A model generated the notes under the pieces. The model saw only the letters and a program-made list of their open reading frames with translations. It had not been told where the DNA came from and searched no databases. Shown in pieces: positions 33,817 through 44,390 of a stretch of 64,000 nucleotides of DNA (the stretch's first letter is position 1; each line of letters opens with the position of its first letter). The position numbers and the translations under genes were made by a program. Location: the NCBI GenBank assembly GCA_950097015.1, contig CATNEN010000011.1, positions 3,286,001-3,350,000 of the forward strand, written 5' to 3'. This stretch comes from Macrostomum hystrix. Taxonomy: Eukaryota > Animalia > Platyhelminthes.

Positions 33817-36800
33817 TCACTCGACCATAGCGTTAGCAGTGGACTCAGATGCAGACTGGTCTCTCCTGCTGCTTGATCGCCGCTGGCTGGCGTCGTTAAA
33901 AGCCGAAGCCATCTGCCTGCGGGTGGCCTCGTATTGCTCAATGTCGGCCAGCCGGCCCGCATAATCTGCCGGAGTTCCAACCGAGTAGCCCGGATGACAT
34001 TCGAGTCCCAGCGCCTCTGGCAGCATGTAGTGCTTGAGCCAGCCAACTAGAGGCGTGGAGCCGAATGTATAGGCCGTACGCCGGTGATAGAACAGGACAC
34101 CGTCCAGCTGTTGGGGATGGAACAGTGGGATCAAATGGGATTTGACTGGGGTGGGTGTAGGATGGCCGGTTCCTGAGGAGTGGGGTGGGTGAAGGATGGC
34201 CAGTTTTTAAGGAGTGGGGTGGGTGTAGGATGGTCAGTTCTTTCGGAGTGGGGTGGGTGTAGGATGGCCAGTTTTTAAGGAGTGGGGTGGGTGTAGGATG
34301 GTCAGTTCTTTGGGAGTGGGATGGGTGTAGGATGGCCAGTTTTTAGGTGTGGGGTGGGTGTAGGATGGCCAGTTTTTAAGGAGTGGGTGGGTGTGTAGGA
34401 TCGTCAGTTCTTTGGGAGTGGGGTGGGTGTAGGATGGCCAGTTTTTAGGTGTGGGGTATGTGTAGGATGGTCAGTTTTTAAGGAGTGGGGTGGGTGTGTA
34501 GGATGGCCAGTTTTTGGGTGTGGGGTGGGTGTAGGATGGTCAGTTCTTCTGGAGTGGTGTTGGTGTAGGATGGCTAGTTCTTAGGGAGTGAGGTGGGTGT
34601 GAGATGACCAGTTCTTAAGGAGTGGGGTGGGTGTAGCATGGCCAGTTATTAGGGGGGTGTGGGATGGCAATTTTTCAACGCAGACTCACAGGAAATGGCG
34701 GCGGCAGCGCCAGAAACTCGGCCAGTTTGTCCCGCTGACAAGAATGAGCCGACACGGTGCAGAACGGATGCCGATTATTGGCGCTCCTGACACCAATGCG
34801 CGGCACAGACTCTGCCATGTTGGTCTCCAGCCAATGAAAGCGAAGCGCTGTCTGTAACCATATGATTGCAACACCGAGTTTTACAGTCTCTATGCGATTA
34901 TCCAATCACACAAAGCTACACAAATGATAAAATTACCTAATGACATCTGAATGAGATTTCCCATTCCCAACAACTGGGATCTCAATGAGATTTCCCTATA
35001 CCCAGCAACTGGGATCTCAATGAGATTTCCCCAAATCTCAACAACTGGAATCTCAATGAGATTTCCCCAAATCTCAACAACTGGAATCTGAATTAGATTT
35101 ACTCATTATTGTGAAATTCTTACCTCGGTATCGTAGAGCTGCAGGTCTCTCCAGTGCATTATGTCCAACACGTGAAAGCTGCTGGTGTCCCAGATGCAAT
35201 CAAGAATTGTCAGGCCAGACTTGCTTTGCCGACAACCGCCAGGCAAATCGGATGGGAAGTTCATAATGCAGCGACCTCTGCGATCGAATGTTCTCGTATT
35301 GCCCTGCCAATGTGTCAATCAATTTTAAGCTATTACGGTAAGGCTGTATAAAGCTGTTCAGTCCATAGACAATTTAAATCCCAACCAATTGGGATCTGTC
35401 ATCCGATATTCAAATTCCAACCAATTGGGATCTGTCATCCGATATTTAAATCCCAACCGATTGGGATCTGTCATCCGATATTTAAATCCCAACCAATTGG
35501 GATCTGTCATCCGATATTTAAATCCCAACCAATTGGGATCTGTCATCCAGTATTCAAATCCCAACCAATTGGGATCTGTCATCCAGTATTCAAATCCCAA
35601 CCAATTGGGATCTGTCATCCAGTATTCAAATCCCAACCAATTGGGATCTGTCATCCGATATTCAAATTCCAACCAATTGGGATCTGTCATCCGATATTTA
35701 AATCCCAACCGATTGGGATCTGTCATCCGATATTTAAATCCCAACCAATTGGGATCTGTCATCCGATATTTAAATCCCAACCAATTGGGATCTGTCATCC
35801 GATATTTAAATCCCAACCAATTGGGATCTGTCATCCGATATTTAAATCCCAACCAATTGGGAACTGTCATCCGATATTTAAATCCCAACCAATTGGGAAC
35901 TGTCATCCGATATTTAAATCCCAACCAATTGGGAACTGTCATCCGATATTTAAATCCCAACCAATTGGGAACTGTCATCCGATATTTAAATCCCAACCAA
36001 TTGGGAACTGTCATCCGATATTTAAATCCCAACCAATTGGGATCTGTCATCCGATATTTAAATCCCAACCAATTGGGATCTGTCATCCGATATTTAAATC
36101 CCAACCAATTGGGATCTGTCATCCGATATTTAAATCCCAACCAATTGGGATCTGTCATCCGATATTTAAATCCCAACCAATTGGGATCTGTCATCCGATA
36201 TTTAAATCCCAACCAATTGGGATCTGTCATCCGATATTTAAATCCCAACCAATTGGGATCTGTCATCCGATATTTAAATCCCAACCAATTGGGAACTGTC
36301 ATCCGATATTTAAATCCCAACCAATTGGGAACTGTCATCCGATATTTAAATCCCAACCAATTGGGAACTGTCATCCGATATTTAAATCCCAACCAATTGG
36401 GAACTGTCATCCGATATTTAAATCCCAACCAATTGGGATATCAATAATCTAATATTCAAAAACCAACCAATGGGACTGTGTACACCTGTTTAGTCCATGG
36501 ACAGGCGGAGGGGCGCCACGCCAACCCGAAATTCAATGTACCAAGCCTGTCTTTATGCTGATAATCGAACTCCCGACCTCTCAGTCAGCAGTCAGAAGCT
36601 CCATACCATTTTGAGTCATACTATAAATCTTCAAATCACTCACCCGAGCAGCCACGACTAGCACCCTCTTGCCCTGCGGACACAATTTGAGCAGGAACTC
36701 AGCTTCGAAATCTTCCGGCACCTCAATGAGCCATTCTGATAGCATCAGCTGATTGCGATAATTGCGTCCCGGCCTACGACGCTTCTGCAGCGATTCAATG

Positions 36801-37201
36801 GAATCGTCCATAGCAACTTCGTCCGCTGCTAGAGTCTCGTCCGTGTCAGCAACCGACGCTAAATCTTCGTTGTCTTCATCGCCATCGTCGCCGAGGCCTC
36901 TAGTCCAGTTGTCTTCAGCCAGACGACGCGCCAGTGCCATAGCATTGAAGCGTCGCTGTTTCTGCAACTCCAGCTCCTTGCGACGTCGTTCGGCCTGATC
37001 GACAACTAAACGACCGCGATTTTTGTACATCGCTTGACGCGACGAAACTAGACTAGCATTCGGAGAAGACGAAGACAGATTCTTAGTAGACGAGGCATTG
37101 GCAAAGCTTTGACATAGGCCAGCCAGTTCGTCATGATTGCTAGACACATCTTTGGCTGCCTGATCTTGAGCAACTGTCTGGTCATTGTTATCTGTGGACA
37201 T
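33817..37201 (-). CDS. SNUPN: Snurportin-1 (m3G-cap snRNP import adaptor); exons 37201-36644, 35303-35124, 34851-34690, 34107-33817; about 396 aa
   Basis: IBB-like YKNRGR...RRRKELELQKQRR, QLMLSEWLIEVP, CPQGKRVLVVAAR, LPGG, TILDCI, VLDIMHWR, RFHWL, DGVLFYH, GSTPLVGWLKHYM. All introns are phase 0 GT-AG. Confidence 0.93.
34145..34650. repeat. G-rich about 33-bp minisatellite, SNUPN intron 3
   Basis: Same unit family as 28935-29450. Confidence 0.9.
34950..35100. repeat. Short degenerate array in SNUPN intron 2
   Basis: About 4 copies of CAACTGGGATCTCAATGAGATTTCCC. Confidence 0.8.
35371..36440. repeat. 36-bp minisatellite, SNUPN intron 1
   Basis: Unit TTGGGATCTGTCATCCGATATTTAAATCCCAACCAA, about 30 copies, each with a TTGGGAT/ATCCCAA inverted pair. 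Confidence 0.96.
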
Positions 37202-37289
37202 TTCTTTTGAATTCTCTGTCTGAAATATCAGATTAAAATGTTATGAAATCACACCTTTAATCTGTACTGATGTTTCAATAACTCAAAAG

Positions 37290-37545
37290 CTCACCCTTGA
37301 TCAGGAGTGGTAGTCTCAAAATCTCACCCTTGATCAGGAGTGGTAGTCTCAAAATCTCACCCTTGATCAGGAGTGTAGTATCAAAATCTCACCCTTGATC
37401 AGGAATGCTATAGTCTTAGAATCTCACCCTTGATAGGGATTGCTATAGTCTTAAAATCTCACCCATGATCATGAATTCTATAGCCTCAAAATCTCACCCT
37501 TGGTCAGAAATGCTATAGTCTCAAAATCTCACCCTTGATCATCAG
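37290..37545. repeat. about 30-bp degenerate array between TSR3-METTL6 and SNUPN
   Basis: Repeated CAAAATCTCACCCTTGATCAGGA. Confidence 0.85.
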
Positions 37546-37773
37546 GAGATCTAAAAATCTAGTCTTAGGGCATCTAATGAAGAAGAAAGTTAATATTAAG
37601 CCTCAGCATAACAAATCAATTGTCATGTAGATCAAAATCAACAAATTTAATTTTGCACGAATTAAACGATCTATTATTATACAAATAACACCAAGTTTGC
37701 AAATACTTCAGTATTAATCTAAAAATGCTCAGAGCCAACACTAAATCAGATCCGATATAAAGTAGCTTTTATT

Positions 37774-39615
37774 CTAGTCGTCAGTTTTCTCAGCCACCGC
37801 CTGAACAAAGACTCGATCAGCGCGAATGCCTTCGCGTCTGTTTACAGTCTCCCTGAGCACGTAGCAGCATTGCAGCACCCGAAGTCCGGCGCCGCGGCAT
37901 AGTGACTCAATCTCTTCCAAGGTGAAAAAATACGAACAGGTGCCGTCTTGACGAACGTACCGAGATTCGGCTAGCTTAGCACCTCGACCAAATCTAAGCT
38001 GGCTATGATCGTGTAGGCCGTAGTCGCGAATTAACAGACGGCCGCCGCAGGTCAAAATAGACGCAGCGTTCCCTACGGCCGTTGCCATCTGTGCCGGTTG
38101 AATCGCTGACAAGACAAAGACCAGAGCTGCTAGGTGAACCCCGCCGCCCCAGTCTTCAAGATGAGAAATGGCCAAAGAGTTGAACTCTGGCGAAGTTAAA
38201 TCGGCGCAGAACGCTCGAAAACGTGTCGACCTGCTTTCTGACTCGCCATCATTTTCTGATCCCTGTTGCTGCCTGTGAGTCTGCCAACGATTCAAAGCCA
38301 TACGGACAGCTCGAGGCGAGAAGTCGCAAGCTAACAGACGCAGATTAGGCAGCTCGGCTAGCAGCGGCATGGCAAAGTTGCCAACTCCGCAGCCTAATTC
38401 GGCTAGAATCAGCGGCCGACTATCCGCCTGTCCTTCAACCTGCTCCCGGCCGGCTAATTCAACAAATTCTCGCTTAGTCCAATGACGATCGCGAAAGAAT
38501 CGATCCCCATTACGATTATAGAATTTGTCCCAATTCTTTTGCGCCTCTGCGTCAACTTGATTGGCGCGATAATTACTAGCCAATTGTTGACTAGACAGCA
38601 ACTGCTGCTCAGCCTCAGTTAGGGATCGAACTTCTCTGGTCTTATTTTGAAATCCGGTCGCAGCGTCGTCTTCACAATCGGCCTCTTTTTCGTCATCTTT
38701 CTGAGGTTCAGTTTCACAGGGATTAACGGATCGAGTAGCGTCCCCATCAACACTCGAGTCTCCGTCGTCAACATCGCCACCACTGCCGCCAAGTTGTTCC
38801 TCCAACTCTTTGGCCAGTTCGCCATAGGACAGGCGTCTCCTAGAGCCAGTCTCCGCAGCCAGAGCTGCCAGATGATCAGCCTGCACTCTGGAAATTTCGC
38901 CAGCATCTTGACAGCCGGCGTATGCGGTTAACAAGTCGGCGTTAAGGTGACGAAATGCCGAACCCCAACCGAATCTAGACAGCACAGCATCGGCGTCGGA
39001 TTGTAAGCCAACAATGCACAATCCGGCTGCGAATGCTTCAACACAAGACAAATTGATCGGCTTGCCATAATTAACTGGATTCGCAGCTACCAGGTATGGC
39101 AATAGGCGCTCATTGTGACACTTCATGCGCGACCAAGGCGTGGATTGTAGCTGGGCCCATGAACAGTCGACAACTGCCAAGCCGGCGCGGCGGACAAGCT
39201 CAGCATCGGCTGGCGATATTGGCGCACTGGCTACAGGAGTCAGCACGACTCCACCAAACCGGCTGCCTAGTCGCAGCTCCGACACCAGGCCTAGTCGAGT
39301 CAATCGACGTCCGGTGCACTTTTTCGGATCGCAATGACCCAGATCCCACATGGCTAGAGGAACAGTTGGCATTGATGAGCAGGCCTCATTGTCACTATCG
39401 CTGCTGTTGTCTGACTGTACTGCTCTGGCTGAATAATCTACGCCCTCATCACCACTACCACCGTCCTGATGTTTCTGGTCGCGTCGAAATCCTCGATGAT
39501 CGCGATTGGCCAGTCCAGAGCGTCTCTGATTTGGGTTGCCGCCGCCGCCGCCCACGCCTTTACGCTTTCCAGCTGAGGCGGCATTCTTTGATCTCTGACC
39601 GCGTTTGTTATCCAT
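37774..39615 (-). CDS. TSR3-METTL6: Intronless fusion ORF, 613 aa: N-terminal TSR3 (18S rRNA aminocarboxypropyltransferase) plus C-terminal METTL6-type tRNA m3C methyltransferase
   Basis: TSR3 motifs: LAMWDLGHCDPKKCTG, AVVDCSWA, RLLPYLVAANPVNYGKP, LSCVEAFAA. METTL6 motifs: EAQKNWDKFY, FFRDRHWTKREF, ELGCGVGN, ACDFSPRAV, FVLSAI, RDYGLHD, YVRQDGTCSYFF, RETVNRREG..RVFVQ. No stop codon lies between them. Confidence 0.9.
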   Translation of the reverse strand: MDNKRGQRSKNAASAGKRKGVGGGGGNPNQRRSGLANRDHRGFRRDQKHQDGGSGDEGVDYSARAVQSDNSSDSDNEACSSMPTVPLAMWDLGHCDPKKCTGRRLTRLGLVSELRLGSRFGGVVLTPVASAPISPADAELVRRAGLAVVDCSWAQLQSTPWSRMKCHNERLLPYLVAANPVNYGKPINLSCVEAFAAGLCIVGLQSDADAVLSRFGWGSAFRHLNADLLTAYAGCQDAGEISRVQADHLAALAAETGSRRRLSYGELAKELEEQLGGSGGDVDDGDSSVDGDATRSVNPCETEPQKDDEKEADCEDDAATGFQNKTREVRSLTEAEQQLLSSQQLASNYRANQVDAEAQKNWDKFYNRNGDRFFRDRHWTKREFVELAGREQVEGQADSRPLILAELGCGVGNFAMPLLAELPNLRLLACDFSPRAVRMALNRWQTHRQQQGSENDGESESRSTRFRAFCADLTSPEFNSLAISHLEDWGGGVHLAALVFVLSAIQPAQMATAVGNAASILTCGGRLLIRDYGLHDHSQLRFGRGAKLAESRYVRQDGTCSYFFTLEEIESLCRGAGLRVLQCCYVLRETVNRREGIRADRVFVQAVAEKTDD

Positions 39616-39689
39616 TTATTATTTTAAGATTGTGAAGCACAATAACCTGCAATAATTCATTGGTATGATAATTTACCACTTGAAACTAT

Positions 39690-40205
39690 AATAAACCTAC
39701 ACAAATCACAATAAACATACACAAACCACAACAAACCTACACAAACCACAATAAACTTACACAATCCACAATAAACCAACACAAACCACAACAAACCCAC
39801 ACAAACCACAACAAACCCACACAAACCACAACAAACCCACACAAACCACAACAAACCCACACAAACCACAACAAACCCACACAAACCACAATAAACCTAC
39901 AAAAATCACAATAAACTTAAACAAACCACAATAAACCTACACGAACCACAATAAACCTACACAAATCACAATAAACTTACACAATCCACAATAAACCTAC
40001 ACAAACCACAATAAACTTACACAATCCACAATAAACCAACACAAACCACAATAAACTTACACAATCCACAATAAACCTACACAAACCACAATAAACTTAC
40101 ACAATCCACAATAAACCTACACAAACCACAATAAACCTACACAAACCACAATAAACCCACACAAACCACAATAAACCCACACAAACCACAATAAACTTAA
40201 ACAAA
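39690..40205. repeat. 20-bp C/A-rich minisatellite upstream of TSR3-METTL6
   Basis: Unit ACAAACCACAATAAACCTAC. Confidence 0.93.
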
Positions 40206-40959
40206 CGACAAGTAATCCTCAAATACTCAATCCATAAAAGACTAAACAAAGCAATTTTTGTGAAATTAATAAAAAGGCAATGCAAAGCATATTTATTACT
40301 TACAACATGATTCACCTCGTAACAATGGCTTACTGATCAGTACGACAAGTATATGGCTATATATTATAAAAACAATTATGCGATAAACATGCTTACTATT
40401 TGTCCTATAGATAGTCGTAGATTATACGCATGCATTTATACAGAATATGTATGATAGAATCGAGAATAAATCTGTTTTACAAAGAATAAAAACAGTAAAA
40501 TATTAGCAAAAATAGGAAATGTTAACGGTAGATTTCTTTAGGAAACAGCAAATGGCAATACACTGCCTGAGATATCAATAATTAACGATGTTTCTCTTAG
40601 AGACTACTTACAAGTAGCACCAAACAAATAATAAGCCTAATCATGTTTAATAGTACATTAGAAAAAAGTCCATTTTTGTTTAAAACAGAAAACACAACTA
40701 CAAGATAAAAACCTATCAGCTGATTAGACAGTTAGTTACAAAAATTCTAGAATAGCTAGACATCCAAACAGAAAAAACTAAAAATTCATTATTGAATTCT
40801 TGATATTAAAAAACTTACGTGAATAAAACGAAATAGTAAAAAAAAAATTTATTGGTAGTTTATTAAAAACCTAACGAAAACACTCTATTGACTTATCTTA
40901 TTTTGCTTAGAAATTGAAAACTTTCACTACAACTTGGGACGTTCCCAGAATTCGCTACT

Positions 40960-41340
40960 TCTGATCTACTGGAACTCGTTACTTCTTATGTACTGGAACT
41001 TTTCAATTTTTAAGTCACTATAACTCGTTACTTATTACAAAAAGGTATTCGTTACTTTTCAGCAAGTACTACTCGATACTGCTTTGGTACTAGAACTGGT
41101 TTCTTCTAAGAACTATTTTTCGTTACTTTTTAGTAACTAATACTCGTTACTGCTTTGGTACTAGAACTCGTTTCTTCTAACAACTATTATTCGTTACTTT
41201 TCAGCAACTATAACGACGTAACTTTTTATACAGGAACTGAAGCGACTTACATTTTACCTACTGGAAATCGTTACTTATCATGTACTAACAGTTTACTTCT
41301 CAGCCGCAATAAACTGTAACATTTCAGCTAATAGAACTCA
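40960..41340. repeat. Degenerate tandem repeat downstream of PP2C stop
   Basis: Recurrent CTCGTTACTT / GTACTAGAACT motifs. Confidence 0.65.
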
Positions 41341-41373
41341 TTAATTACTATTTAGATACTAGGACCCTATCAA

Positions 41374-44187
41374 TCACAACCAGGCGACAATAACGGTGGT
41401 GTTGTCTGTGGACCCCGCAGCAACAGCCATGTCAATCAAAGCGCTGGCAGCCGAAGCCTCATCGCCATCAACTCCGCTGTCTGTTGACATGGCTAAAAGT
41501 GCAGCCGCAACTTCACCGGGCGTCACAGCGTCCCACAAACCGTCGCTAGCCAGTACAACGGCCACATCATTGCCCATAGGATTCAAATCCAACTGACGCT
41601 GAACGATTTGTGGTTCGGGTGTAACTCCGACAACATTGCGATCGCCCAGACTGCGGGTGACAGCTAGCACGCCGTTAAGCCTCGGCGGTGAGCTGTCCAT
41701 GACGAAGCCGCCAGCTGATTCAACGCGAGCTCGTTCGCTTGGCTCGCTTGGACGATGCGGCGGCGAGGTCAACTGGGTTGCCTGGCCATTGCGGTGAATT
41801 AAATAGGCTTCAGAGTCGCCAACCCAGGCCACGGTTAGGCGATCGCCGGAGACGATACAAGCCTGAGCCATATTTCAAAGAGATTTTTTAAGGCGATTAA
41901 GAACAACCAGAAAATAAATAAGAGAATTTGTTTAGTTCTTTTAATAAAAAAATATTAACGCGTTTGCCTCTCGAAACAATGTCCCTGAGCTCGATTCCGC
42001 GGCGAGGCCCCATTAATTTTTGGCGCAACCGCGAATAGAAGTCTTGGGGGCTTGTCGTGCAATTTACACCATTGAAAGGGCCAACGACTAAGGCACAGTG
42101 AGAGTGTACACTGCCTGACGGATGCAAACGTAACACACCTGCGTGATCGTGTGACTGCGTACAGTATCTGTGTGCGTATGTGCTCAGGAGTTAGCGAAAC
42201 GGGCAGAATTGCCTCCTCGCTGGCTGTGTATCTAGTGTCACAAAATGATGTGCCTCTAAACCTCGAATCTTATTCCCCAAACCTTGAATCACATTCCCTA
42301 AATCGCGAATCCCATTCCGCAAAACCTCGAATCCCATTCCCCAAACCTCGAATCCCATTCCCTAAATCTCGAATCCCATTCCCTTAACAAAGAATCCCAT
42401 TCCGCAAACCTCGAATCCCATTCCCCAAACATTGAATCCCATTCCGCAAACCTCGAATCCCATTCACTAAATCTCGAATCCCATTCCCTAAATCTCGAAT
42501 CCCATTCACTAAATCTCGAATCCCATTCCCTAAATCTCGAATCCCATTCCGCAAACCTCGAATCCCATATCGCAAACCTCGAATCCCATTCCCTAAATCT
42601 CGAATCCCATTCACTAAATCTCGAATCCCATTCCCTAAATCTCGAATCCCATTCCGCAAACCTCGAATCCCATATCGCAAACCTCGAATCCCATTCCCTA
42701 AATCTCGAATTCCATTCCCTAAATCTCGAATCCCATTCCGCAAACCTCGAATCCCATTCCCTTAACAAAGAATCCTATTCCCTTAACAAAGAATCCTATT
42801 CCCTTAACAAAGAATCCCATTCCCTTAACAAAGAATCCCTTTCCCTAAACCTCAAGACAACTTACAGTACAAGTGCATCCGCCGGCAGTGCCGCAAAGAC
42901 TCGCCGCCTTGGCCAGCTTGGCATCAGCAGCTAGAAACACATTCCTTAGCCTGTCAGCCGCACTCGTGGCTTTTTCATCGCCATTGGCCTTTGTCGCCGA
43001 GTTAACACTATCGCTATCGCAGTCGACTCTCGCAGCCGCGAGAAACAACGGCAGAAGATACGAGGCCGCCAGTTCAGCCCCGTCGCTGCCGCCGTGGCCG
43101 TCAAGAACGGCGAGAAAATTTGCTTCGCCATTTGCGCAGCTTCTCTCGCCGATATCCTTCAAATCGGCGCTGTTGAAGGCGGCCACTAGGAAGCGGTCCT
43201 CGTTGCGTCGGCCGCGATTTTTTGCGGTGGCCTGGCGGGATTTTAAGTATTTTTTATTTCTGTTCCTGATAGGTGAATATATCCTCCCACCTACTCCCTA
43301 TTTACTGGAATTTCATTCTCCGAATGGGGAAATAATCCAGCTTAAAACTTGAAAACAATTATTCTAAAATGGGACAATAAGTCTCAAATAATTGGGAAAT
43401 AAGCATGTCATAATCAGGAATAAAAATATTTGCAGAAGGGCTGCAGGCAATGGCACATCATTTGGTGACACTAGACGCACAGCCAGCGCACACAGATACC
43501 GTACGCAGACAAACGCTCACACAGGTGTGTACATCACAAGTGCACATCCTGCCCTAATCAGGAAATAATCACTTTCATACAGTCCTTCATAAATTTGGGA
43601 AACTATGCGCCCTTAATGGGGAATTTACATTCTAGGCTCTAGCATGACATCCCCTTATTCTCCAATAGGTAGATTGCCAATCAAGCAACAAGCAAGCTCA
43701 CGTGTGACACCAGACGAACACAACCGGCATCTCTCTGATAGCTGGGCGAATCGACACTGTCAACTCCGCTCCGTTCCGGACGCCCACCAAGATCTTCGCC
43801 TTCATTGTCGCCAAAATAGGCGCGCATTTTCAATTCGGAGCCTTTTTCGGCCAGTTCGCGAACAGCTTCGCATATTAGGCGTTGAACCGATCGATAATCT
43901 GGCTGAGGCGGCGGCGATGAAGCAGATTCTTCGTTGAATCTGGCAGTGAAATTGTCGCCAAGCAGATAGCGAGACAGCTTAGCCTGCGCCTGCCAAGCCT
44001 GCTTATCCCCTGTGGCCAATTTAAACAATTGCGGAGTTATTAAGTCCACAATCTGTTTGACAAAGTACCACTGAGCTGAGCTAGTATCTGAGAAACTTTG
44101 AAACGGCGGTCGAGAAACAGATGAAGGATCAGATAGGGATTCAACCGCTTCCTTGGCAGCCGAGGCTATCATGGCTGCTGAGTCCAT
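41374..44187 (-). CDS. PP2C/PPM family phosphatase, PPM1E/PPM1F (CaMKP/FEM-2)-like; exons 44187-43702, 43231-42866, 41862-41374; about 446 aa
   Basis: LVSH|ATAKNRGRRNEDR, FLAVLDGHGG, GCTCT|ACIV..LTVAWVGDS, RLNGVLAVTRSLGD, LASDGLWD, GSTDNTTV. Both introns are phase 0. Subfamily call rests on resemblance to PPM1F LVSIHAIRNTRRKMEDR. Confidence 0.9.
41955..42260 (+). mobile_element. SINE family A, 5'-truncated (PP2C intron 2)
   Basis: AACGCGTTTGCC...GTCCCTGAGCTCGATTCCGCGGCGAGG...GGCACAGTGAGAGTGTACACTGCCTGACG. Confidence 0.75.
42265..42850. repeat. 21-bp minisatellite, PP2C intron 2
   Basis: Unit AAATCTCGAATCCCATTCCCT. Confidence 0.95.
43425..43550 (-). mobile_element. SINE family A 3' fragment, reverse orientation (PP2C intron 1)
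   Basis: Reverse complement matches CAAATGATGTGCCATTGCC.GCAGCCCTTCTG (11376-11410) and GCTGGCTGTG..TCTAGTGTCAC (42218-42241). Confidence 0.65.
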
Positions 44188-44390
44188 TGCTGTTTGCTGT
44201 AAATCTTACTCGCACAGATTTTAACTTGGTGTCATAAAAACTCACACGAATGCCAGATTATATAATATATATATTTTTCCATACAAATTGTGGCTCTAGC
44301 CTATTTGTATATGGTTAAGTGACTGTTTTGCAGTGTCTTCATTTGTTACATGACAAAGGTCCCAAAAGACTATATAATAAGAAAGGGGTA

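What the first reader, a model, noticed from the sequence alone, without database searches (positions are those of the whole stretch)
37774..39615. TSR3-METTL6 fusion: one ORF joining an rRNA and a tRNA SAM-dependent modifier
Seen: a 613-aa stop-free, intronless ORF with a complete TSR3 domain (about aa 85-270), an acidic low-complexity linker, and a complete METTL6-type methyltransferase (from about aa 325). Established: TSR3 transfers the aminocarboxypropyl group of SAM to the hypermodified 18S rRNA m1acp3-pseudouridine; METTL6/Trm140-family enzymes methylate C32 (m3C) of tRNA-Ser/Thr; they are separate genes in yeast and human. I know of no described fusion, but cannot search. Inference: either a bifunctional enzyme coupling small-subunit maturation and tRNA anticodon-loop modification, or two operon cistrons fused by stop-codon loss.
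Basis: partly seen in the sequence, partly recalled or inferred. Interest (0 to 1): 0.85.

Follow-up and report, generated by a model that had tools for sequence, protein, structure and literature searches.

The report
Flatworm-wide TSR3–METTL6 fusion gene
This Macrostomum flatworm gene really does encode, on one spliced-leader-capped mRNA, a single protein joining the 18S rRNA modifier TSR3 to the tRNA-serine methyltransferase METTL6; the same fusion occurs across free-living and parasitic flatworms, where databases label it only as TSR3 and no searchable paper describes it.

Summary
Window 37774-39615 (-) is an intronless 613-codon ORF. It has a full TSR3 module (aa 85-277), a 43-residue acidic low-confidence linker (278-320) and a full METTL6 module (about 321-610). 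In two runs of one study, single transcriptome contigs match the genome with no mismatch or gap from a 5' splice acceptor to about 150 nt past the stop. Each contig carries the Macrostomum spliced leader, so one mature mRNA spans the fusion.

The fusion is neither an artefact nor private to this genome. The same domain order occurs in M. lignano (intronless, same neighbours), a monogenean, two cestodes and six trematodes including Schistosoma. No protein outside a flatworm-like clade showed it among the 150 best of an exhaustive search of 1.84 billion representatives. All mapped catalytic, SAM-binding and SerRS-contact residues are kept. dN/dS is about 0.04 (TSR3) and 0.08 (METTL6), while the linker evolves freely. 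The linker resembles the acidic C-terminal tail of stand-alone TSR3.

Most likely this is an old flatworm-lineage fusion giving a bifunctional enzyme with two independent modules. Functional coupling, and internal trans-splicing or cleavage, are untested. No paper found describes the fusion. Interest is moderate.

The parts
37609..39646 (-). Mature mRNA body (single exon) of the TSR3-METTL6 gene
   Evidence: One contig each from runs X5 (2069 nt) and X6 (2046 nt) lies on 37609/37625-39647 with 0 other letters, 0 gaps and no joints.
39647..39648 (-). Spliced-leader trans-splice acceptor AG (context ...attattgcAG|gttattg)
   Evidence: Both contigs continue beyond 39647 with 23 non-genomic letters. 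Their reverse complement plus the shared G equals the last 24 nt of the published 35-nt Macrostomum lignano SL (PMC8629364).
39608..39646 (-). 5' UTR carrying a 13-codon uORF opened by the AUG at the end of the spliced leader (MVIVLHNLKIING, stop TAA 39610-39608), overlapping the main ATG out of frame
   Evidence: Read from the sequence joined to the SL 3' end ...GCATG. Its translation is inferred, not shown.
37774..39615 (-). Coding sequence, 613 codons plus stop (TAG 37774-37776)
   Evidence: The start is supported by a conserved M-(D/K/R)-x-K-R N-terminus in the orthologues.
39364..39615 (-). N-terminal basic then Ser/Asp-rich tail, aa 1-84, predicted disordered
   Evidence: pLDDT below 50 for aa 1-76; 49% identity to M. 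lignano, dN/dS 0.35.
38785..39363 (-). TSR3 module, aa 85-277 (Fer4_RLI-like N part, Ribo_biogen_C core, two C-terminal helices including the conserved RRLSYGELAKELEEQL segment)
   Evidence: Pfam; PDB Tsr3 E 1.4e-23; Foldseek TM 0.75-0.88 to Tsr3 structures 5ap8 and 5apg; pLDDT mostly above 90; dN/dS 0.04.
38656..38784 (-). Acidic low-complexity linker, aa 278-320
   Evidence: pLDDT below 50. Over aa 276-316 it is 27% identical to M. lignano; the whole pairwise alignment holds 48 extra M. lignano residues, most of them in-frame insertions here. Length varies among flatworms. It resembles the acidic C-terminal tails of stand-alone TSR3 proteins.
37786..38655 (-). METTL6 module, aa 321-610 (m3C-specific N-terminal helices, NWDKFY and FFRDRHW motifs, class I SAM-methyltransferase core)
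   Evidence: PDB METTL6 E 1.5e-57; Foldseek TM 0.79-0.88 to METTL6 structures; every named top hit that carries a family name is METTL6; dN/dS 0.08.
37609..37773 (-). 3' UTR (about 150-165 nt)
   Evidence: The contigs end at 37609 (X5) and 37625 (X6). The poly(A) site itself cannot be read from contigs.

Best explanation
This is a genuine single gene of a Macrostomum flatworm. It is transcribed, spliced-leader trans-spliced and translated as one 613-residue protein. That protein carries two complete SAM-dependent RNA-modifying enzymes. The N-terminal TSR3 module transfers the aminocarboxypropyl group of SAM to the m1-pseudouridine of 18S rRNA helix 31 during late cytoplasmic 40S maturation. 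The C-terminal METTL6 module makes m3C32 in cytosolic tRNA-Ser with seryl-tRNA synthetase as its recognition partner. The fusion arose once in the flatworm lineage, before Macrostomorpha and Neodermata split, by joining METTL6 (from about its residue 3) to the end of TSR3's own dispensable acidic C-terminal tail. That tail now serves as a flexible, fast-evolving tether. The two modules most likely act independently on their usual substrates, and the fusion mainly guarantees equal co-expression. Shown: the ORF, the single SL-capped mRNA, the conservation across flatworms, retention of functional residues, and purifying selection on both halves. Inferred: both enzymatic activities, independence of the modules, a single origin and the mode of origin.
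For: ORF and domains.

One mRNA: in each of two runs a single contig covers 37609/37625-39647 with no mismatch, gap or joint. Its 5' extension equals the 3' 24 nt of the Macrostomum spliced leader.

Conservation: the same N-TSR3/C-METTL6 order is found in M. lignano (three entries), Cichlidogyrus, Anoplocephala, Spirometra, Fasciolopsis, Paragonimus, Echinostoma, Clonorchis, Opisthorchis and Schistosoma rodhaini, plus three unnamed proteins. The protein tree follows flatworm classes. The M. lignano orthologue is intronless and has the same neighbours, PP2C and snurportin-1. In the cestode, aa 1-362 (TSR3, linker and METTL6 N-terminus) lie on one genomic block. A 2126-nt transcript-like contig carries the whole fused ORF of a schistosome relative.

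Restriction to flatworms: among the 150 best of an exhaustive HMMER search of 1.84 billion representatives, only six proteins are fused: three named flatworms, and three unnamed that cluster within flatworms.

Competence: TSR3 residues K99, T101, R104, L125, P127, D150, W153 and R170 correspond to VdTsr3 K17, T19, K22, L45, P47, D70, W73 and R91. METTL6 residues Y349, K360, D363, Y366, R368, FFRDRHW 373-379, GCGVGN 408-413, D531 and Y532 correspond to human F32, K43, D46, Y49, R51, FFKDRHW, motif I, D189 and Y190. These are conserved in fused proteins as in stand-alone ones (PMC4872110, PMC11479938).

Selection: dN/dS is 0.04 and 0.08 for the two modules.

Architecture: the AF2 model has two confident domains, a linker at 278-320 with pLDDT below 50, and pTM 0.59. 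Foldseek matches METTL6 and Tsr3 structures separately.

Tolerance of fusion: yeast Tsr3 aa 46-270 is fully active and a C-terminal tag is tolerated (PMC4872110). Stand-alone TSR3 proteins end in acidic tails like the linker.
Against: No protein-level evidence exists: no peptide spans the linker and no enzymatic activity has been measured.

The RNA evidence is assembled contigs from one study. Contigs drop minor isoforms, so an internal spliced-leader site or a METTL6-only mRNA cannot be excluded.

pTM is only an indirect sign of missing inter-domain contacts, because no PAE was available.

A single origin is inferred from shared domain order and from the absence of named stand-alone flatworm genes among the 120 listed hits of the two domain-only searches. 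Those lists are truncated, and Catenulida, polyclads and planarians could not be identified by name.

dS between the two Macrostomum species is saturated (about 2), so the dN/dS values are approximate.
Confidence: 0.8

Rival explanations
1. One locus, two proteins. The fused ORF is real, but the cell mostly makes separate TSR3 and METTL6. [quoted passage not shown]
For: The Macrostomum leader ends in AUG, and genes with several SL sites are reported in M. cliftonense and M. hystrix (0.2-1.4% of genes; PMC10468722). Seven in-frame AG| positions exist between aa 250 and 335, one in a CCTCAG context at codon 306. The linker is disordered and so accessible to proteases.
Against: No joint, loose end or contig break lies inside the ORF in either run. 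None of the in-frame AGs has the T-rich context of the real acceptor. The linker is poorly conserved and differs by large indels in M. lignano, which argues against a conserved internal processing signal. There is no Met between aa 164 and 416, nor any conserved Met at the METTL6 junction in other flatworms. The frame has stayed open across the linker in every lineage, which would not be required for two separate products.
Confidence: 0.08
2. Functionally coupled enzyme. The tether brings METTL6, possibly with SerRS and tRNA-Ser, to the late pre-40S particle where TSR3 docks near the P site, or gives the METTL6 module a new ribosomal substrate. The fusion would then be an adaptive link between small-subunit maturation and tRNA anticodon-loop modification.
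For: The fusion has been kept across a large part of a phylum and no named stand-alone copy was listed. Both enzymes are cytoplasmic and use SAM. A short segment after the TSR3 core (SY.D.YAELD..L) is conserved among the fused proteins and was not matched by a strict motif pattern in 34 stand-alone TSR3 proteins.
Against: The linker is variable in length and sequence and is predicted disordered. pTM 0.59 gives no sign of a fixed interface. The tRNA-Ser/SerRS-specific residues of METTL6 are retained, implying the usual substrate (PMC11479938). Long retention of a fusion is also expected without coupling once the separate genes are gone.
Confidence: 0.1
3. Artefact or decaying gene: an assembly chimera, a sequencing error hiding a stop or frameshift between two adjacent genes, or a fusion in which one half is an inactive relic.
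For: Only that gene-model merges of neighbouring genes are common in draft animal genomes. Some other 'TSR3 + kinase' hits look like such merges.
Against: RNA-derived contigs from two runs are identical to the genome across the whole ORF. The M. lignano orthologue is a continuous intronless ORF too. The fusion recurs in 13 other proteins. All functional residues are retained, and dN/dS is 0.04-0.08 in both halves.
Confidence: 0.02

Closest known systems
TSR3 / Tsr3 (18S rRNA aminocarboxypropyltransferase; Pfam PF04068 + PF04034; structures 5AP8, 5APG)
   Same: There is a full-length match to both Pfam models, 45-59% identity to animal TSR3 cores, the same fold (TM 0.75-0.88), and all mapped SAM- and RNA-binding residues are present. 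Like other eukaryotic TSR3 proteins, it has a disordered N-terminal tail and an acidic stretch after the core.
   Different: The protein does not end after the acidic tail. It continues into a second enzyme. Stand-alone TSR3 is about 260-390 aa, whereas this protein is 613 aa.
METTL6 (tRNA-Ser m3C32 methyltransferase; S. pombe Trm141-type; structures 7EZG, 7F1E, 8OWX, 8P7B)
   Same: It aligns from human residue ~4 to ~264. It keeps the NWDxFY and FFxDRHW motifs, motif I GCGVGN, D189/Y190 equivalents, and the SerRS-contact positions F32 (Y here, F in most fused proteins) and R51. The fold matches with TM 0.79-0.88.
   Different: It has no initiator Met of its own and is preceded by about 320 residues of TSR3 plus linker. 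It has a lineage-specific insertion (aa ~447-465). Human K50 is N here and in 8 of 13 fused proteins.
Unannotated TSR3-methyltransferase proteins of other flatworms (for example M. lignano PAA71245.1, Fasciolopsis buski KAA0198326.1, Cichlidogyrus casuarinus KAL3320348.1, Schistosoma rodhaini CAH8598058.1)
   Same: They are orthologues: same domain order, the same conserved post-core segment and an acidic linker. Identity is 74% (M. lignano) and 40-44% (the parasitic-flatworm and unnamed fused proteins). M. lignano has the same intronless structure and neighbours.
   Different: Linker length and sequence differ, and the parasite genes contain introns. Their source records name only the TSR3 half, name only the methyltransferase domain, or give no name.
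Other bifunctional RNA-modification fusions (for example bacterial RlmKL and MnmC, recalled from memory)
   Same: Two independent SAM-using RNA-modifying modules sit on one polypeptide.
   Different: Those pair enzymes that act on the same RNA or the same pathway. Here one module targets rRNA and the other tRNA, and one transfers acp rather than methyl.

Membership tests
TSR3 (18S rRNA acp transferase) | Matches Pfam Fer4_RLI (PF04068) and Ribo_biogen_C (PF04034) above the gathering scores | tested here: met
   54.4 bits (cut-off 23) and 161.8 bits (cut-off 29.9), profile 1-126 of 127.
TSR3 (18S rRNA acp transferase) | SAM-binding and methyl-shielding residues (VdTsr3 T19, L45, P47, D70, W73; yeast S62, E111, W114) and the basic RNA-binding residues (yeast R60, K65, R131) | tested here: met
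   T101, L125, P127, D150, W153, K99, R104 and R170, from the alignment to 5APG numbering. They are conserved in all or nearly all fused proteins. Residue roles are from PMC4872110.
TSR3 (18S rRNA acp transferase) | SPOUT-like two-domain fold with a deep trefoil knot | tested here: inconclusive
   The AF2 model superposes on 5AP8 and 5APG with TM 0.75-0.88 and rmsd 2.0-2.9 A. The knot itself was not checked.
TSR3 (18S rRNA acp transferase) | Transfers acp to m1-pseudouridine in 18S rRNA helix 31 | not testable with these tools
   Needs primer extension or mass spectrometry on 18S rRNA after knock-down or complementation.
METTL6-type m3C32 tRNA methyltransferase (IPR026113 family, tRNA-Ser branch) | Class I SAM-methyltransferase core with motif I and the acidic motif II | tested here: met
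   ELGCGVGN 406-413 and ACDFS 429-433, invariant G408, G410 and D431. Pfam Methyltransf_12 and Methyltransf_23 score above cut-off.
METTL6-type m3C32 tRNA methyltransferase (IPR026113 family, tRNA-Ser branch) | m3C-specific RNA-binding elements: the WDxFY(K) helix and the FFKDRHW substrate-binding loop; active-site D189/Y190 | tested here: met
   NWDKFY 361-366, FFRDRHW 373-379, D531 and Y532. Motif roles are from PMC11479938.
METTL6-type m3C32 tRNA methyltransferase (IPR026113 family, tRNA-Ser branch) | SerRS-interface residues said to be exclusive to tRNA-Ser-targeting enzymes (human F32, R51) | tested here: met
   Y349 (F in 9 and Y in 3 of 15 fused rows) and R368 (13 of 13 with a residue at that position) (PMC11479938).
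METTL6-type m3C32 tRNA methyltransferase (IPR026113 family, tRNA-Ser branch) | Orthology to METTL6 rather than METTL2 or METTL8 | tested here: inconclusive
   Every named hit among the 120 listed that carries a family name is METTL6 or a METTL6-type m3C enzyme; none is METTL2 or METTL8, and the only PDB hits are METTL6. No explicit tree with METTL2/8 was built.
METTL6-type m3C32 tRNA methyltransferase (IPR026113 family, tRNA-Ser branch) | Forms m3C32 on tRNA-Ser in a SerRS-dependent manner | not testable with these tools
   Needs an in vitro assay or m3C mapping.
Spliced-leader trans-spliced flatworm mRNA | A non-genomic 5' leader identical to the genus SL, joined at a genomic AG | tested here: met
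   23 loose letters plus a shared G equal the last 24 nt of the 35-nt M. lignano SL, in two runs, at AG 39648-39647.
Member of an SL-resolved operon (PP2C / TSR3-METTL6 / snurportin-1) | Same-strand neighbours at short distance, downstream genes trans-spliced, and a common primary transcript | tested here: inconclusive
   The same strand and the same order are conserved in M. lignano, and the fusion gene is trans-spliced. The stop-to-ATG gap to snurportin is 572 nt, of which 260 nt is a tandem repeat. No polycistronic precursor was seen, and SL use by snurportin was not tested.

The most novel reading that the evidence does not exclude
The tether is functional. By riding on TSR3, the METTL6 module (with SerRS and tRNA-Ser, or alone) would be delivered to the late pre-40S particle next to the P site. 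There it might couple tRNA-Ser anticodon-loop methylation to small-subunit quality control, or might have gained a ribosomal RNA target. This would be a flatworm-specific link between ribosome maturation and tRNA modification, present in major human parasites.
Probability: 0.08. Interest if true: 0.8.

Novelty: new variant of a known kind. Interest (0 to 1): 0.5.

Why it matters
Both enzymes are well characterised as separate proteins in yeast and human. A fusion kept across much of a phylum is a natural 'Rosetta stone' that raises the question of whether 40S maturation and tRNA-Ser m3C32 formation are linked. It also offers a simple experimental handle, because one gene knock-down in the tractable model Macrostomum lignano removes both activities.

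The case shows how a dispensable acidic tail of one enzyme can become an inter-domain linker. It corrects the annotation of a whole orthologue group now labelled only as TSR3, which hides the only METTL6 found here in these species.

The architecture occurs in schistosomes, liver, lung and intestinal flukes and tapeworms but not in their hosts, so it marks a lineage-specific form of two conserved translation-related enzymes. If the modules are simply independent, the finding is a tidy evolutionary curiosity and not a new mechanism.

Tried and rejected
1. Assembly or annotation artefact: rejected.

2. A non-flatworm occurrence of the fusion: I looked among the 150 best of the exhaustive search and Pfam-scanned ten of the longer hits. 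P0127 and P0129 turned out to be further flatworm-type fusions. The others were TSR3 alone, METTL6 alone, or TSR3 joined to other domains (SET, eIF2D winged helix).

3. P0123, the best METTL6-only hit: I tested whether it was a fragment of a fusion. It is a stand-alone gene on three marine-metagenome contigs with no TSR3 upstream, from an unknown organism.

4. Ancestral adjacency of TSR3 and METTL6 in outgroups: not seen within 10 kb in Tubulanus, Lingula or Physella, so the operon-fusion origin gains no support from them.

5. The methyltransferase next to the Anoplocephala fusion gene: I tested it as a possible m3C paralogue. It shares only the generic SAM-binding motif with METTL6 (tblastn E 0.018); from memory its N-terminal ORF resembles NDUFAF5.

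6. Conserved post-core motif SY.D.YAELD: a strict pattern was not found in 34 stand-alone TSR3 proteins. Monosiga has a loosely similar FSYDLSDLDL, so whether the motif is fusion-specific is unresolved.

7. The first global alignment with untrimmed single-domain proteins (A2) smeared the tails and was discarded in favour of the trimmed A3.

8. The Schistosoma rodhaini gene could not be fetched by exact look-up, so its apparently truncated 439-aa model was not examined.

9. Runs X1 and X3 gave only short identical fragments and added nothing.

10. The scan's own notes hold no other TSR3 or METTL6 entry for this genome. This is weak evidence only.

Full report
**1. Observation**

The ORF listing finds one ORF at 37774..39615 on the minus strand: 613 codons, ATG start.

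Domain evidence:
- Pfam places Fer4_RLI at aa 85-118 and Ribo_biogen_C at aa 123-248 (162 bits, whole profile). These are the two models that define TSR3. Class I methyltransferase models cover aa 400-582.
- Against PDB sequences, aa 317-606 align to human METTL6 from its residue ~3-4 to ~264-268 (E 1.5e-57).
- aa 90-244 align to the two archaeal Tsr3 structures (E about 1e-23).

**2. Organism and transcript**

I laid contigs on the repeat-free stretch 37545-39689 (2145 letters). Runs X5 and X6 are the same organism and the same 2020 study, each with about 45 Mb of contigs.

- Each run gives a single contig (2069 and 2046 nt).
- Each contig lies on 37609/37625-39647 with no differing letter, no gap and no joint.
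- Both contigs run on beyond 39647 with the same 23 letters that are not in the genome.
- The reverse complement of those letters, plus the shared G, is TGCGAAGACTCAATTTATTGCATG. This is the last 24 nt of the published 35-nt Macrostomum lignano spliced leader (PMC8629364).
- The join sits exactly at a genomic AG (39648-39647).

These contigs are therefore RNA-derived, and the window comes from a Macrostomum species. The protein is 74% identical to M. lignano, so the species is not M. lignano itself; the SL is reported as highly conserved in the genus (PMC10468722). One mature SL-capped mRNA spans the 5' UTR, the entire fused ORF and about 150-165 nt of 3' UTR.

Caveat: contigs cannot show minor isoforms, and both runs come from one study.

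**3. The fusion is conserved in flatworms**

A full-length search returned the same TSR3-plus-methyltransferase architecture in these proteins:
- M. lignano: 634 aa, 100% coverage, three near-identical entries
- Anoplocephala perfoliata
- Spirometra erinaceieuropaei
- Fasciolopsis buski
- Paragonimus heterotremus
- Clonorchis sinensis
- Opisthorchis viverrini
- Echinostoma caproni
- unnamed proteins

I then looked at the 150 best hits of an exhaustive HMMER search of 1.84 billion representatives. Only P0001, P0002, P0121, P0122 (the monogenean Cichlidogyrus casuarinus), P0127 and P0129 (Schistosoma rodhaini) carry both domains. Everything else listed is a single-domain protein, or TSR3 joined to something unrelated.

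In a maximum-likelihood tree the fused proteins group as follows:
- Macrostomum
- cestodes
- trematodes, with P0121 as sister to Schistosoma
- Cichlidogyrus on its own
- a separate clade of two unnamed proteins

Gene-structure evidence:
- The M. lignano gene is intronless and lies between the same neighbours, PP2C upstream and snurportin-1 downstream.
- In the cestode genome, residues 1-362 (TSR3, linker and the METTL6 N-terminus) map to one genomic block. That model does not depend on a long intron bridging two genes.
- A 2126-nt contig, L004, holds the whole fused ORF of P0121 with UTRs on both sides. It begins ...ACATTGCATG, which is like the 3' end of a flatworm SL. This is suggestive only.

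Domain-only searches listed no named stand-alone flatworm TSR3 or METTL6 among their 120 listed hits. Every named hit of the C-terminal half that carries a family name is METTL6 or a METTL6-type m3C enzyme; none is METTL2 or METTL8.

Macrostomorpha branch off before the other rhabditophoran flatworms (established phylogeny, from memory). The simplest reading is therefore one fusion event at or before the base of Rhabditophora.

**4. Both halves look active**

TSR3 residues were mapped using the numbering of the 5APG alignment and the roles given in PMC4872110.

| Window residue | VdTsr3 | Yeast Tsr3 |
|---|---|---|
| K99 | K17 | R60 |
| T101 | T19 | S62 |
| R104 | K22 | K65 |
| L125 | L45 | not mapped |
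| P127 | P47 | not mapped |
| D150 | D70 | E111 |
| W153 | W73 | W114 |
| R170 | R91 | R131 |

METTL6 residues were mapped using the alignment to full-length human METTL6 and the roles given in PMC11479938.

| Window residue or motif | Human METTL6 | Role |
|---|---|---|
| Y349 | F32 | SerRS contact |
| K360, D363 | K43, D46 | variable-arm contacts |
| NWDKFY 361-366 | WDLFYK motif | contacts with SerRS, SAH and the tRNA variable arm |
| R368 | R51 | SerRS contact |
| FFRDRHW 373-379 | FFKDRHW | substrate-binding loop |
| GCGVGN 408-413 | motif I | SAM binding |
| D531, Y532 | D189, Y190 | active site |

Across 15 fused and 64 stand-alone proteins, these positions are as conserved in the fused group as in the stand-alone groups.

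Codon comparison with the M. lignano orthologue:

| Region | dN/dS or identity |
|---|---|
| TSR3 core | dN/dS about 0.04 |
| METTL6 module | dN/dS about 0.08 |
| N-terminal tail | dN/dS 0.35 |
| Linker (aa 276-316) | 27% identity |

The pairwise alignment holds 48 extra M. lignano residues in all, most of them in-frame insertions in the linker. dS is saturated, so these ratios are approximate.

**5. Architecture**

- An AlphaFold2 model built on a 79-sequence alignment has mean pLDDT 79.9 and pTM 0.59.
- aa ~77-277 and ~321-613 are confident. aa 1-76 and 278-320 fall below pLDDT 50.
- Foldseek matches the C-terminal half to METTL6 structures (TM 0.79-0.88) and the N-terminal half to Tsr3 structures (TM 0.75-0.88).
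- Stand-alone TSR3 proteins from many phyla end, after the core, in acidic D/E/S-rich tails of roughly 30-130 residues.
- In yeast, C-terminal truncations of up to 76 residues and a C-terminal tag leave activity intact (PMC4872110).
- Stand-alone METTL6 proteins align from their residue ~2-28 onto fusion residues 313-330.

The linker is therefore best read as TSR3's own dispensable tail, to which a complete METTL6 lacking its initiator Met was joined. The window protein has no Met between residues 164 and 416, and there is no conserved Met at the junction in other flatworms. A stand-alone METTL6 cannot arise by ordinary internal initiation.

**6. How it most likely works**

- Shown: one SL-capped mRNA, one ORF, two intact modules under purifying selection, a flexible variable tether.
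- Inferred: the TSR3 module performs the cytoplasmic acp transfer to 18S rRNA.
- Inferred: the METTL6 module makes SerRS-dependent m3C32 on tRNA-Ser.
- Inferred: each module acts on its usual substrate, and the fusion enforces equal expression.

I put about 0.8 on this overall reading.

Rivals:
- (a) Separate products by internal SL trans-splicing or cleavage, about 0.08. The Macrostomum SL ends in AUG, and seven in-frame AG sites exist in the linker region, none with the T-rich context of the real acceptor.
- (b) True functional coupling on the pre-40S particle, about 0.1.
- (c) Artefact or decay, about 0.02.

**7. Origin**

It is not supported by outgroups. Within 10 kb of METTL6 there is no TSR3 in a nemertean, a brachiopod or a gastropod. 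The gene now sits in a same-strand cluster, PP2C then fusion then snurportin-1, that is conserved between two Macrostomum species. I showed only that the fusion gene is trans-spliced.

**8. Novelty**

Eight full-text searches, and a reading of the METTL-family evolution paper, found no description of a TSR3-METTL6 fusion. That paper left Platyhelminthes out of its trees and mentions neither TSR3 nor a fusion. The proteins are nonetheless public; their source records name only the TSR3 half, name only the methyltransferase domain, or give no name.

This is a new, apparently undescribed variant architecture of two well-known enzymes. It is conserved across much of a phylum and is not a peculiarity of this window. 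Interest is moderate at 0.5. The fusion is a clean natural experiment and an annotation correction. It becomes a new mechanism only if coupling is shown.

Noticed in passing
window 39608-39646 (-): The AUG at the 3' end of the spliced leader, joined to the exon at 39646, opens a 13-codon uORF (MVIVLHNLKIING, stop TAA 39610-39608). It overlaps the main ATG (39615) out of frame, so the main ORF would need leaky scanning or re-initiation.
   Followed up: partly
window 33817-44198 versus L009 3063-15497: The gene order PP2C, then intronless TSR3-METTL6, then snurportin-1, all on one strand, is the same in M. lignano. The gap between the fusion stop and the snurportin ATG is about 540-570 nt in both species.
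   Followed up: partly
window 39690-40211, 37282-37541, 35372-36439, 34147-34651: Tandem arrays flank the gene and fill the snurportin intron: 20 nt x26 just upstream of the SL acceptor, 35 nt x7.6 in the downstream intergenic region, 36 nt x29.7 at 98% identity, and 34 nt x15.
   Followed up: no
proteins P0164, P0182, P0096, P0066: Other TSR3 fusions exist outside flatworms. TSR3+SET domain forms a cluster of 10 from environmental eukaryotes. TSR3+eIF2D winged helix was also seen. Heterodera schachtii has TSR3 with RIO-type kinase Pfam hits, which is intriguing given the known Tsr3/Rio hierarchy (PMC8925970) but may be a gene-model merge. Adineta has TSR3+enoyl-CoA hydratase.
   Followed up: no
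L004 1-14: The transcript-like contig of the schistosome-related fused protein P0121 begins AGACACATTGCATG. This resembles the ...TTGCATG 3' end of flatworm spliced leaders.
   Followed up: no
proteins P0008 and P0127: Two unnamed fused proteins form their own strongly supported clade, apart from trematodes, cestodes and Cichlidogyrus. They could be planarian or another monogenean lineage, and identifying them would extend the taxonomic range.
   Followed up: partly
L005 3126-5701 (-): In Anoplocephala the fusion gene has a divergently transcribed 343-aa methyltransferase as neighbour. It shares only the generic SAM-binding motif with METTL6; from memory it resembles NDUFAF5.
   Followed up: yes
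L001-L003: The best METTL6-only match (P0123, 50% identity) is an intronless stand-alone gene on marine-metagenome contigs, two of them from Tara Oceans samples, from an unidentified eukaryote.
   Followed up: partly
window 37780-38333 and 39176-39637: Runs X1 and X3 (organisms A and B, a 2024 study) hold short contigs identical or nearly identical to the gene, with A>G at 38005 and 39253 in X1. This suggests the same or a very close species under other labels.
   Followed up: no
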